This document shows, one piece after another, positions 63,051 to 64,000 of a DNA stretch of 64,000 nucleotides. Under the pieces are notes generated by a model. It saw only the letters and a program-made list of their open reading frames with translations. It was not told where the DNA came from and made no database searches. The stretch covers positions 1 to 64,000 of the IMG/VR virus record IMGVR_UViG_3300041411_000080; one strand, 5' to 3'. A program made the translations under genes and the position numbers. The number at the start of each line of letters is the position of its first letter. Positions within the stretch are counted from its first letter, which is position 1.

Positions 63051-63245
63051 TCAGTAAGTTAAATGTGATGGTCGTTCACAATCAAGTTTTGGATTAGATA
63101 TATCGAAGACAACTGGGCGCCAACTGACATGTTCGGGATTGGAGCGATTACCACTGTCTCTTAAGGATGCTCGTCCACCGACGGTTACATGTCGTCCCGG
63201 CATTAGTCTGGTGTCGAGATAGGTATCTTCTTGCTCTCTACTCAT
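63051..63245 (-). CDS. charged peptide, array C (64 aa)
   Basis: start overlaps the upstream stop; R/D/S-rich. Confidence 0.7.
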   Translation of the reverse strand: MSREQEDTYLDTRLMPGRHVTVGGRASLRDSGNRSNPEHVSWRPVVFDISNPKLDCERPSHLTY

Positions 63246-63421
63246 CGGAAGCGTCTCTCATTAACGTTAGGTTCATCATTGGTTCTAGAAACGTTTGTAT
63301 CTAGATGTACAAACTCACGGTAACCTTCACCCTTACGTTTGAGTCGCTCCGAGGACAATCCTTGTAGGCGATGAATAACCACATTACCGCGTCCATATTC
63401 TGAATTATAATCTAGTTTCAT
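63242..63421 (-). CDS. charged peptide, array C (59 aa, start MKLDY)
   Basis: GAGG SD before ATG 63421. Confidence 0.7.
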   Translation of the reverse strand: MKLDYNSEYGRGNVVIHRLQGLSSERLKRKGEGYREFVHLDTNVSRTNDEPNVNERRFR

Positions 63422-63452
63422 TGTAAACCTCATTTGTTAGTGGCGGCATAAA

Positions 63453-63470
63453 GCTTCCCCGAAGGGAAGC
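63453..63470 (-). terminator. intrinsic terminator, cUUCGg loop
   Basis: GCTTCCC-TTCG-GGGAAGC-TTTAT. Confidence 0.75.
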
Positions 63471-63496
63471 AGTATACCCATTAGATTAGATAAGCC

Positions 63497-63637
63497 TAAT
63501 GAAAGTCGAAGAAGCACGTAGTTAGGTACTGACGTTAGCTCCCGCTAATGTTCTTAACGTACCAGGTCACCTATGGCTGGATCACCCCCTTGAACGCAGT
63601 GCGTATTTGCACGGACTGCTTCTTGACTATACCATTA
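63497..63637 (-). ncRNA. candidate structured non-coding RNA
   Basis: ORF-free gap between two terminators; end-to-end helix UAAUG..AGUCAAGAAGCA / UGCUUCUU-C-GACU..CAUUA enclosing several hairpins; strand inferred. Confidence 0.5.
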
Positions 63638-63679
63638 CACTCAGAGTATTCTTTTAACCAAAAAAAGAAAAGGTATAAC

Positions 63680-63699
63680 GCCCTACCTTACGGTAGGGC
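63680..63699 (-). terminator. intrinsic terminator, GNRA loop
   Basis: GCCCTACC-GTAA-GGTAGGGC then a T-rich run. Confidence 0.75.
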
Positions 63700-63705
63700 T
63701 ATTAT

Positions 63706-63942
63706 TTATTCTAAGGTGAAGTTTCGGTATAACACAATGTCTTGCTCCAAATCGATAACGGTGTAGTACTTTGCGAACTCGTTATCGATCGGTAAATCGT
63801 AATTGTGATCTACCCATGCTTCCATCTCCTTCTGGGTATTGAAAGAGATCTTAACATAGTGCGTAGGACAGGTACGACCTGGACCCCATGACCGAAGTTT
63901 ATATTCGGCTTCAAACAATGGTTTAACGACTTTATTCTGCAT
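63706..63942 (-). CDS. hypothetical protein (78 aa)
   Basis: AAGGA SD. Confidence 0.75.
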   Translation of the reverse strand: MQNKVVKPLFEAEYKLRSWGPGRTCPTHYVKISFNTQKEMEAWVDHNYDLPIDNEFAKYYTVIDLEQDIVLYRNFTLE

Positions 63943-63964
63943 CTTTAAAATCCTTTAAGTTAAC

Positions 63965-63984
63965 GCCTTACCGAATAGTAAGGC
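63965..63984 (-). terminator. hairpin, probable terminator
   Basis: GCCTTAC-cgaata-GTAAGGC on the plus strand. Confidence 0.5.
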
Positions 63985-64000
63985 TATTGGTTACAGATGG

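What the first reader, a model, noticed from the sequence alone, without database searches (positions are those of the whole stretch)
63453..63699. Candidate structured ncRNA isolated between two terminators, heading peptide array C
Seen: about 210 nt with no credible ORF in an otherwise gapless genome. The ends pair (63617-63637 with 63497-63516: 5 bp + 4 bp + 8 bp with one bulged base) and enclose GUGC-AAAUAC-GCAC, a CCAG/CUGG stem and GGUAC[..UUAGC-GGGA-GCUAA..]GUACC with a GNRA loop. Inference: a protein-binding or decoy RNA. The end-paired bulged stem recalls Y RNAs, which partner Ro60 and RtcB in RNA repair, but it does not match the Ro site exactly and no Ro60 gene is in the window. The strand is inferred from the terminators.
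Basis: partly seen in the sequence, partly recalled or inferred. Interest (0 to 1): 0.75.

Follow-up and report, generated by a model that had tools for sequence, protein, structure and literature searches.

The report
Jumbo-phage small RNA complementary to 16S tail
The gap holds a real, conserved, folded small RNA gene of giant Pseudomonas-type phages whose one unchanging single-stranded stretch is the exact complement of the 3' end of the host's 16S ribosomal RNA (the anti-Shine-Dalgarno tail), which suggests a phage RNA that grips the small ribosomal subunit.

Summary
Window 63445-63627, minus strand, is a stand-alone gene of about 183 nt for a non-coding RNA. It has a phiKZ-type middle promoter (A-rich plus TACT) and a hairpin-UUUAUGCC terminator.

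It is the only stretch of this region conserved at DNA level in phiKZ, 201phi2-1, PhiPA3, PS119XW, Viktualia, D6, RVTF4, Phabio, DT01 and uncultured jumbo phages. There is one copy per genome.

Thirty homologues share a three-way junction (P1, P2, P3-P4 with a GNRA loop). In these, 94.5% of pair cells are paired and 21 of 23 pairs show compensatory changes, a level reached by 0 of 500 shuffles.

The homologous terminator of 201phi2-1 (TTS 229,201) was mapped and validated experimentally in a published study.

The junction strand AAGGGGGUGAUCCAGCC is invariant and complements the 16S rRNA 3' end for 14-20 nt. Every variant seen within the first 16 positions keeps that pairing (A/G opposite U, C/U opposite G). 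The predicted duplex is -33 to -38 kcal/mol.

No Rfam family, conserved ORF or Ro60 gene fits. The best reading is a trans-acting RNA that binds the anti-Shine-Dalgarno tail of host 30S subunits. That step is inferred, not shown. I found no description of it in the literature.

The parts
63645..63655 (-). phiKZ-type middle-promoter motif: A-rich run (63649-63655) followed by TACT (63645-63648), about 22 nt upstream of the inferred start
   Evidence: The sequence is. The motif definition (TACT centred 22 nt upstream of the TSS, preceded by an A-rich repeat) comes from PMC8244752. The same arrangement is present in PS119XW, 201phi2-1, D6, L014, Phabio and phiKZ (TACG there).
63445..63627 (-). 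the small RNA gene, about 183 nt (5' end inferred to within about 3 nt, 3' end by homology)
   Evidence: The 5' end follows from the promoter spacing and the conserved UAUAG|P1 boundary. The 3' end follows from homology to the experimentally mapped 201phi2-1 TTS 229,201 (= L002:2502). Model hits cover 63507-63628.
63617..63627 (-). P1, 5' strand (GUCAAGAAGCA)
   Evidence: Pairs with 63505-63516 (UGCUUCUU-C-GAC). The P1 pairs are 99% paired in 30 sequences, and 6 of 7 show compensatory changes. Helix table.
63505..63516 (-). P1, 3' strand
63596..63618 (-). P2 hairpin (GCAGU ... ACUGC with an inner CGUG/UACG or GUGC/GCAC extension). Its first three bases overlap the inner end of P1, so the two pairings are alternatives.
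   Evidence: 95% paired, 3 of 4 pairs compensatory. Type C has GCAGU-UUCG-ACUGC and L016 has GUACU-UUCG-AGUAC.
63575..63591 (-). invariant junction strand AAGGGGGUGAUCCAGCC, complement of the 16S rRNA 3' end (about positions 1525-1541, anti-Shine-Dalgarno included) with one G.U
   Evidence: Invariant in A1, A2 and A8. It is the reverse complement, apart from one A>G, of the universal 16S 3'-end primer, which 752 papers hold, and of real 16S gene ends in L346, L353 and L360. Duplex -35.3 kcal/mol. No conserved intramolecular partner.
63525..63563 (-). P3-P4 arm: P3 GGUAC/GUACC (63559-63563 with 63525-63529), P4 UUAGC/GCUAA (63544-63548 with 63535-63539) plus an extension AC/GU, and the GNRA loop GGGA (63540-63543)
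   Evidence: all 12 pairs of the arm have compensatory changes. A relative's contig shows three double changes: 63535/63548, 63533/63550 and 63532/63551.
63517..63524 (-). junction strand J3/1, UAACUACG (ACG(G) is conserved in most homologues but not in Phabio)
63479..63501 (-). P5 hairpin (CAUUAG ... CUAAUG), present in phiKZ-like (type A) members only
   Evidence: Compensatory variants: CGUCAAC/GUUGACG (Viktualia), CGUUGG/CCGACG (201phi2-1), GCUUGGA/UUCAAGC (PhiPA3), GAUCUG/CGGAUC (Phabio).
63445..63470 (-). terminator: GCUUCCC-UUCG-GGGAAGC (63453-63470) followed by UUUAUGCC (63445-63452)
   Evidence: Stems covary: GCCUCCC, GCCAGCC/GGUUGGC with a G.U, GCCCAGC, GCCCGGC, GGAGCCC. The homologous 201phi2-1 terminator was chosen for >99% efficiency and outperformed the lambda T0 control in an in vivo terminator trap (PMC11512511).
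63680..63699 (-). terminator hairpin of the upstream gene (63706-63942). It is not part of the RNA.
   Evidence: Its tail GUUAUACC resembles the phage's terminator tail motif.

Best explanation
Window 63445-63627 (minus strand) encodes a stand-alone, trans-acting small RNA of a jumbo phage.

It is transcribed from a phiKZ-type middle promoter, so presumably by the phage's non-virion RNA polymerase, and stopped by an efficient intrinsic terminator.

It folds into a three-way junction: a closing helix P1, hairpin P2, and a P3-P4 arm capped by a GNRA loop. phiKZ-like members add a hairpin P5.

This fold presents a 16-17-nt strand between P2 and P3 that no conserved helix covers. The strand is complementary to the last 14-20 nt of host 16S rRNA, including the whole anti-Shine-Dalgarno sequence.

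The most likely mode of action is base pairing with the 3' tail of 16S rRNA in 30S subunits or pre-30S particles. The RNA would act as a start-codon-less 'super Shine-Dalgarno' that occupies or tethers small subunits and so alters translation initiation during infection.

Shown: the gene, its strand, its fold, its conservation, its complementarity, and (in 201phi2-1, from the literature) its 3' end.

Inferred: the 5' end, binding to the ribosome, and any consequence for translation.

The confidence given is for the whole statement. That it is a genuine structured sRNA gene I hold at about 0.9, and the ribosome-binding step at about 0.5.
For: Conservation
- Only this intergenic stretch is conserved at DNA level (72-80%) among Pseudomonas jumbo phages whose flanking genes are not. 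A relative's 13-kb contig matches only 63439-63637.
- There is one copy per genome in phiKZ, DT01, PS119XW and the window's own genome. Phabio has one weak match.

Structure
- In 30 homologues, 94.5% of pair cells are paired, against 69.5% in shuffles and 27-35% with slid partners.
- 21 of 23 pairs show compensatory change, reached by 0 of 500 shuffles.
- Model R2, built without the window, finds it at 50 bits, E 1.7e-8.

Strand and transcription
- G.U outnumbers A.C 16 to 5.
- UUCG and GNRA loops occur on this strand only.
- The A-rich+TACT motif lies 22 nt before P1.
- 201phi2-1 TTS 229,201 falls exactly at the homologous 3' end, and that terminator was validated in vivo.
- In PS119XW the element lies antisense to both neighbours, so it is its own gene.

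16S complementarity
- The invariant strand equals the universal 16S 3'-end primer apart from one A>G that still pairs with U.
- Every variant seen within the first 16 positions keeps pairing: position 1 A/G, position 5 G/A (D6, RVTF4, Phabio, L313, L321), position 16 C/U (phiKZ).
- In phiKZ and PS119XW the complementarity extends to 19-20 nt.
- Duplexes are -33 to -38 kcal/mol in all 27 homologues, against -9.2 for AGGAGG, z about -6.6 against shuffles.
- After paying for unfolding, the net gain has a median of -21 kcal/mol, or -9.6 with the 13-nt free tail alone.
- The strand is predicted more open than the rest of the RNA: 0.5 against 0.36 unpaired, and 0.6-0.7 for its 3' half.
- No alternative complementary target exists in the phage genome.
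- No conserved ORF or start codon follows the strand. UAG or UAA often does.
Against: - No RNA reads could be laid for this phage or for phiKZ, so expression rests on one published 3' end in 201phi2-1 plus promoter and terminator motifs.
- The pairing with 16S is purely computational.
- Positions 1525-1529 of 16S lie in helix 45 in mature 30S subunits. The full 17-20 bp could form only on immature or remodelled subunits. On mature 30S about 12-13 bp are available.
- Phage mRNAs in this window also use Shine-Dalgarno sequences, so a plain blocker of the anti-SD would hurt the phage too.
- The G-run half of the strand is predicted partly paired (0.13-0.57, mostly 0.2-0.5, unpaired).
- The alignments used for the pair counts were fitted to the model.
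- The RNA was not found in EL, OBP or in chimalliviruses of Enterobacterales, Vibrio, Aeromonas and Ralstonia. It is therefore not a universal need of nucleus-forming phages.
- A Grad-seq study of phiKZ-infected cells did not report it.
Confidence: 0.5

Rival explanations
1. The RNA is a sponge or scaffold for a protein. The partner would be a phage or host RNA-binding protein such as ribosomal protein S1, Hfq, RsmA/CsrA, or a phage-nucleus RNA-binding protein. On this view the invariant strand is a protein recognition site and its match to 16S is incidental, or it reflects mimicry of an mRNA ribosome-binding site.
For: A 17-nt block that never varies is also what a sequence-specific protein site looks like. 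The conserved fold with a GNRA-capped arm could be a scaffold.
Against: A chance match of an invariant 16-mer to the very 3' end of 16S is about 1e-5, even allowing wobble (own estimate from the sequence). The only variants seen in the first 16 positions are those that keep pairing with 16S. Most members have GGGGG, which lacks the GGA core of RsmA sites. No conserved neighbouring protein gene was noticed in the flanks inspected, and the flanking genes differ between genomes.
Confidence: 0.15
2. It is a cis-acting 5' leader (attenuator, riboswitch-like element or ribosome standby site) that controls the gene downstream. The short RNA would be only the prematurely terminated by-product.
For: In most genomes a gene follows on the same strand within 30-80 nt. 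Published ONT-cappable-seq work reports many 5'UTR-derived short RNAs made by premature termination in phiKZ and 201phi2-1.
Against: In PS119XW the element is antisense to both neighbours. The downstream genes are not homologous between genomes. In phiKZ, D6, RVTF4 and Phabio an early-promoter-like AAATCTATATTAC lies between the terminator and the next gene. The 201phi2-1 terminator was among those chosen for over 99% efficiency. No conserved alternative pairing with the terminator stem was seen.
Confidence: 0.1
3. The strand is an ordinary, very strong Shine-Dalgarno sequence that drives translation of a small peptide encoded within the RNA.
For: Small phages do use the full 17-nt complement as a leader about 25 nt ahead of a conserved ORF. 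The window has a GUG-started 11-codon frame after the strand.
Against: No start codon is conserved at 4-12 nt from the SD core, and the frames differ between subtypes. UAG or UAA commonly follows the strand. The downstream sequence evolves by compensatory pair changes, not with a three-base period.
Confidence: 0.04
4. It is a Y-RNA-like partner of Ro60/RtcB, or a DNA-level element such as an origin or a packaging site.
For: The ends pair into a bulged stem, and the element is conserved as DNA.
Against: No Rfam Y RNA or YrlA match. No TROVE domain in the complete genome. The stem sequence is free to covary. Covariation and the G.U asymmetry point to an RNA, not a duplex DNA site.
Confidence: 0.03

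Closest known systems
Shine-Dalgarno elements of mRNAs, including extended 'super-SD' leaders
   Same: The same target and the same pairing register with the 16S 3' tail. The core GG(A/G)GGUGAU is a Shine-Dalgarno sequence.
   Different: The complementarity runs 14-20 nt instead of 4-9. It sits in a junction of a folded, terminated, non-coding RNA. No start codon or ORF follows. It is invariant across phage lineages whose other RNA sequence has diverged.
[quoted passage not shown]
   Same: Small RNAs proposed or shown to act by binding the small subunit directly rather than an mRNA.
   Different: Those are processing fragments of cellular RNAs that bind near the decoding site or mRNA channel. 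This one is a dedicated phage gene with its own promoter and terminator, and its predicted contact is Watson-Crick pairing with the anti-SD tail.
sRNA candidates of phiKZ and 201phi2-1 from Grad-seq and ONT-cappable-seq (PMC8545117, PMC10914365, PMC11512511)
   Same: The same phages and the same kind of short terminated transcripts. The terminator of the 201phi2-1 homologue (TTS 229,201) is in that data set.
   Different: The RNAs named in those papers lie at other loci: 3'UTR of PHIKZ298, 5'UTR of p40, upstream of gp182/gp277, PHIKZ221 and PHIKZ302. No text I could read mentions this locus, its fold or its 16S complementarity. The supplementary tables were not available.
Y RNA / YrlA with Ro60
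   Same: Size of 100-200 nt, with 5' and 3' ends paired into a stem that has a bulge.
   Different: No Ro-binding sequence, no tRNA-like module, no Rfam match, and no Ro60 gene in the genome.
6S RNA
   Same: An analogy of logic only: a folded RNA that imitates a nucleic-acid ligand of a core machine (open promoter DNA for RNA polymerase there; an mRNA ribosome-binding site here).
   Different: Unrelated fold, partner and origin. No Rfam 6S match.

Membership tests
Y RNA / bacterial YrlA (Ro60 partner) | Match to the Rfam covariance models for Y RNA or Y-RNA-like RNAs | tested here: not met
   No match at gathering score in the whole window. None at E up to 10 in 63300-63800. None at E up to 1 in six homologous loci.
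Y RNA / bacterial YrlA (Ro60 partner) | A Ro60 (TROVE domain) gene in the same genome | tested here: not met
   PF05731 was searched in six frames over the complete 320,858-bp genome with no match. The control search found it in Deinococcus and Bacteroides.
Y RNA / bacterial YrlA (Ro60 partner) | A conserved Ro-binding sequence in the stem formed by the RNA's ends | tested here: not met
   The P1 sequence differs between subtypes (AAGAAGCA, CAAGGCA, ACAGGCA, GUACAGG) and changes by compensation.
Any described RNA family (Rfam 15) | Score at or near a family's gathering threshold | tested here: not met
   ARAGORN finds no tRNA or tmRNA.
phiKZ-type transcription unit (middle promoter plus intrinsic terminator) | A-rich run plus TACT about 22 nt upstream of the start | tested here: met
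   AAAAGAATACT at 63655-63645, 22 nt before UAUAG|GUC. The same holds in type A homologues. Motif definition from PMC8244752. The start itself was not mapped.
phiKZ-type transcription unit (middle promoter plus intrinsic terminator) | A GC-rich hairpin followed by the conserved tail, with a mapped 3' end | tested here: met
   Hairpin 63453-63470 plus UUUAUGCC. The 201phi2-1 TTS 229,201 falls on the homologous CC and was validated in vivo.
Trans-acting base-pairing sRNA | A conserved, accessible seed that is complementary to a target | tested here: met
   The invariant 16-17 nt have no conserved internal partner, are more open than the rest, and are complementary to the 16S 3' end.
Trans-acting base-pairing sRNA | Demonstrated pairing with, or an effect on, the target | not testable with these tools
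   No interaction or expression data could be laid.
Shine-Dalgarno / translation initiation region | Complementarity to the 16S 3' tail | tested here: met
   14-20 contiguous pairs in every homologue.
Shine-Dalgarno / translation initiation region | A start codon 4-12 nt downstream that opens a conserved ORF | tested here: not met
   None is conserved, and UAG or UAA often follows.
Cis-regulatory leader (attenuator or riboswitch) | A fixed position upstream of, and in the same sense as, a homologous regulated gene | tested here: not met
   Antisense to both neighbours in PS119XW. The downstream genes are unrelated between genomes. A separate promoter-like motif lies after the terminator in four genomes.

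The most novel reading that the evidence does not exclude
Giant phages of Pseudomonas and related uncultured jumbo phages carry a dedicated RNA gene whose product base-pairs with the anti-Shine-Dalgarno tail of host 16S rRNA. This would be a phage-made antisense RNA against the ribosome itself. It would capture, mark or re-route 30S subunits (or block the maturation or decay of the 16S 3' end) to tilt translation toward the phage. It would be the first natural RNA known to target the 3' end of 16S rRNA in trans.
Probability: 0.4. Interest if true: 0.92.

Novelty: categorically new. Interest (0 to 1): 0.85.

Why it matters
How nucleus-forming jumbo phages take over translation is an open question, since their mRNAs must be exported and compete for host ribosomes. 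So far only proteins have been implicated, for example PhiKZ014 on the large subunit.

An abundant phage RNA that pairs with the anti-Shine-Dalgarno tail would be a new layer of host takeover. It would also be a new class of ribosome-targeting regulator.

It is directly testable in two model phages, phiKZ and 201phi2-1, for which transcriptomes, gradients and antisense knock-down methods already exist.

Even if the ribosome link fails, this is a well-supported new structured RNA family with a clean covariance model. It could be added to annotation pipelines for jumbo phage genomes, where the locus is now either blank or mis-called as tiny hypothetical proteins (Viktualia CDS0006, DT01 PA10_00263).

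Tried and rejected
- Rfam at gathering and at permissive E-values on the window and six homologues gave nothing. ARAGORN gave nothing.
- RNAalifold on a plain MAFFT alignment of all subtypes recovered only P4 and the terminator, because the subtypes are misaligned. I replaced it with a hand-set structure, covariance models and pair counts.
- An automatic helix finder mis-set P3 or P4 in several sequences, so I used it only as an illustration.
The window's runs are DNA metagenomes and gave no expression data. The run search with the 201phi2-1 stretch found only partial holders.
- Host-specific covariation with 16S (CCAACC expected for enterobacterial hosts) could not be tested. The 16 IMG/VR loci with GGGGGTGATCCAACC are not family members, and no enterobacterial chimallivirus has the RNA.
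- The genome-contig scan for the 17-mer returned 120 or more hits. That is about the chance expectation for 596 Gb. The ones inspected are coding (a hydantoinase-like gene ..RKGVIQPG..).
- I looked for a second target in the phage genome with the perfect CCCCC complement and found only chance-level near matches.
- A sigma-70-like promoter on the plus strand (63623-63652) is at chance level.
- Supplementary tables of the two transcriptome papers were not held.
- Literature searches for a phage RNA aimed at the anti-SD found none.

Full report
**What is at the site**

The window is the first 64 kb of a complete jumbo-phage genome from IMG/VR: 320,858 bp with direct terminal repeats. Genes around the finding run on the minus strand.

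Between the ORFs 63706-63942 and 63242-63433 lie about 270 bases without a credible ORF. The hairpin 63680-63699 follows the stop of the upstream gene directly and ends it. The hairpin 63453-63470 (GCUUCCC-UUCG-GGGAAGC) followed by UUUAUGCC closes the element itself. Rfam and ARAGORN find nothing.

**Conservation**

A sensitive blastn of 63200-64000 against 50,697 phage records hits only 63444-63671, at 72-80% identity. The records hit are all Pseudomonas jumbo phages: Viktualia, 201phi2-1, PhiPA3, the PS119XW group and others. The flanking genes do not match at DNA level.

A scan of IMG/VR with the invariant 17-mer, followed by covariance models, brought in more members:
- phiKZ itself (212,852-212,971, between PHIKZ203 and PHIKZ204);
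- D6, RVTF4, Phabio and DT01;
- about twenty uncultured contigs, nearly all of 70-325 kb.

There is one copy per genome. A relative's 13-kb contig from a metagenome matches the window only over 63439-63637 and is unlike it on both sides.

The element keeps company with the virion SNF2/DEAD helicase gene in phiKZ-like phages. In the window's genome that gene is at 64,974-67,103. Its orientation relative to its neighbours is not fixed, however. In PS119XW it is antisense to both neighbours.

Subtypes C and D sit in genomes that encode the helicase homologue. The two subtype B genomes searched do not.

The RNA was not found in EL or OBP. It was also not found in chimalliviruses of Klebsiella, Serratia, Erwinia, Salmonella, Kosakonia, Vibrio, Aeromonas or Ralstonia.

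**Strand and ends**

The RNA is read from the minus strand.
- UUCG and GNRA loops appear only in that sense.
- The 201phi2-1 terminator stem has a G.U, which would be an A.C on the other strand.
- Over all helices, G.U outnumbers A.C 16 to 5.

Upstream lies AAAAGAATACT (63655-63645). The phiKZ middle-promoter motif is an A-rich repeat plus TACT centred 22 nt before the start (PMC8244752). This places the start at the conserved UAUAG|GUC boundary, about 63627, which is the first base pair of P1. The same spacing holds in the other phiKZ-like members.

The 3' end follows from homology. ONT-cappable-seq of 201phi2-1 mapped a termination site at 229,201, which is the second C of UUUAUGCC in the homologue. 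That terminator was among those selected for over 99% efficiency, and it outperformed the lambda T0 control in an in vivo terminator trap (PMC11512511). The window's RNA is therefore about 63627 to 63445, 183 nt.

I could obtain no reads for this phage.

**Fold**

From the homologues I set a structure by hand and built a model from six subtype C sequences. It then found every other member full length, and it rejected chance occurrences of the 17-mer.

A second model, built from 22 sequences that did not include the window or its four nearest relatives, scores the window at 50 bits, E 1.7e-8.

The pair counts on 30 sequences are as follows (22 sequences):

| Measure | Value |
|---|---|
| Pair cells that are standard pairs | 94.5% |
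| Same, with partners shuffled | 69.5% |
| Same, with partners slid by 1-3 columns | 27-35% |
| Pairs with changes on both sides | 21 of 23 |
| Covariation score, observed against shuffled | 0.65 against 0.21 |
| Shuffles that reach the observed values | 0 of 500 |

These alignments are fitted to the model, which flatters the numbers. Independent support comes from three sources:
- Single-sequence folds recover P1, P3 and P4 in most homologues.
- The relative's contig carries three double changes in P4.
- P1 has quite different sequences in the subtypes.

The architecture in window coordinates, minus strand:

| Element | Coordinates |
|---|---|
| P1 | 63617-63627 with 63505-63516 |
| P2 | 63596-63618 |
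| Junction strand | 63575-63591 |
| P3 | 63559-63563 with 63525-63529 |
| P4 | 63535-63548 (GGGA loop 63540-63543) |
| J3/1 | 63517-63524 |
| P5 | 63479-63501 |
| Terminator and tail | 63445-63470 |

The inner three pairs of P1 and the outer three of P2 use the same GCA. Both partners are conserved, so the junction may switch between two registers.

**The invariant strand**

AAGGGGGUGAUCCAGCC does not vary while everything around it does. It has no conserved intramolecular partner. Its G-run pairs with different pyrimidine tracts in different subtypes, and its 3' half is predicted open.

It is the reverse complement of the 3' end of 16S rRNA apart from one A>G.
- AAGGAGGTGATCCAGCC is the universal 16S 3'-end primer, held by 752 papers.
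- Real 16S gene ends that contaminate IMG/VR contigs read AAGGAGGTGATCCAGCC-GCAGGTTCCCCTACGGCTACCTTGTTACGACTT in the same sense (L353).
- The G that differs faces U1537 and still pairs.

The variants found in the first 16 positions all preserve pairing:
- A or G at position 1, opposite U;
- G or A at position 5, opposite U. D6, RVTF4, Phabio, L313 and L321 have the perfect GGAGG;
- C or U at position 16, opposite G (phiKZ).

The last position is free (C, A or U). Phabio stops after 14 nt, while phiKZ and PS119XW extend to 19-20 nt.

Predicted energies:
- Duplexes are -33 to -38 kcal/mol in all 27 distinct homologues, against -9.2 for AGGAGG.
- Net of unfolding, the gain has a median of -21 kcal/mol, or -9.6 if only the free 13-nt tail is offered.

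My estimate of a chance match of an invariant 16-mer to this particular site, wobble allowed, is about 1e-5. Allowing any site in 16S it is about 1e-2.

No start codon or ORF is conserved after the strand. The phage genome holds no other complementary site.

**Interpretation**

The gene, strand, fold, family and complementarity are shown. That the RNA binds 30S subunits through the anti-Shine-Dalgarno tail is an inference, and I hold it at roughly even odds.

There are difficulties.
- The last five target bases lie in helix 45 of the mature subunit.
- The phage's own mRNAs use Shine-Dalgarno sequences.
- The RNA is absent from many related phages.

Possible effects include titration of free 30S, tethering of subunits, interference with 16S 3'-end maturation or decay, and guidance of a protein to the tail. 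I cannot choose among them.

The rivals are less likely for the reasons given under each: a protein sponge, a cis leader, a real ribosome-binding site for a peptide, a Y RNA, or a DNA element.

**Literature**

Three transcriptome or gradient studies of phiKZ and 201phi2-1 list sRNA candidates, but the ones they discuss are at other loci. Their supplementary tables, which may list this transcript, were not available.

Full-text searches found no paper that describes a phage RNA complementary to the 16S 3' end.

Noticed in passing
L329-L334, L336, L340-L343, L347-L349, L351-L352, L354-L355, L357-L359, L361-L363 (IMG/VR contigs of 4-75 kb): About 24 small-phage contigs share a conserved leader: GGGGACCCCTATTAC, then AAGGAGGTGATCCAGCC, then about 24 nt, then ATGAGAGG. 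The full 17-nt perfect complement of the 16S 3' end thus lies about 25 nt ahead of an ORF (MRGVD...). That ORF has no Shine-Dalgarno next to its ATG. This is a 'super-SD' unrelated in fold to the jumbo-phage RNA.
   Followed up: partly
L303, L307, L308, L310, L317, L318, L320, L322-L326, L328: A second recurrent, almost identical context of GAGGAGGTGATCCAGCC occurs in 7-45 kb viral contigs (GCATATAAACATCGCTTCGACAAGA...GTCTCTCGCACTCCAG). It is open in one frame, so coding or not is undecided.
   Followed up: no
L346, L353, L360: Real 16S rRNA gene 3' ends sit inside contigs filed as viral (they read through the 1492R primer site). This is probably contamination of the collection.
   Followed up: no
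window 63483-63491 (minus strand), loop of P5: UAUCUAAUC is complementary to the 790 loop of 16S rRNA (GAUUAGAUA, from memory). It is only partly conserved: Phabio has CUAUCUAAUC, PS119XW has UCUAAUC and Viktualia has CUAAUC. A 9-mer match to some 16S site is expected by chance, so this is weak.
   Followed up: partly
L041:3774-3845 (-) and L077:1104-1195 (-): Two short possible relatives score 25-27 bits with R2. Each has a stem that encloses AGGGGGUGAUCCAGC, followed by a terminator with a U-rich UUUAU tail. L077 also has a GGGA-capped hairpin. One lies in a complete 77-kb phage genome without the chimallivirus helicase.
   Followed up: partly
L159:2255-2275 (phiKZ); L181, L182, L370 downstream of the RNA: An early-promoter-like AAATCTATATTAC sits directly after the RNA's terminator in phiKZ, D6, RVTF4 and Phabio. 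The next gene therefore has its own promoter.
   Followed up: no
L001:2591-2680 (Viktualia CDS0006) and L023:3024-3146 (DT01 PA10_00263): Small 'hypothetical proteins' annotated in public records lie inside or antisense to the RNA gene. They are probably mis-calls.
   Followed up: no
L183, L208, L220, L228, L238, L260, L277 (Microbacteriaceae genomes): The 17-mer occurs in frame in a conserved hydantoinase-like gene (..YGRKGVIQPGADADLVVYDP..). This is a coding coincidence that gives weak model hits of 22-26 bits.
   Followed up: yes
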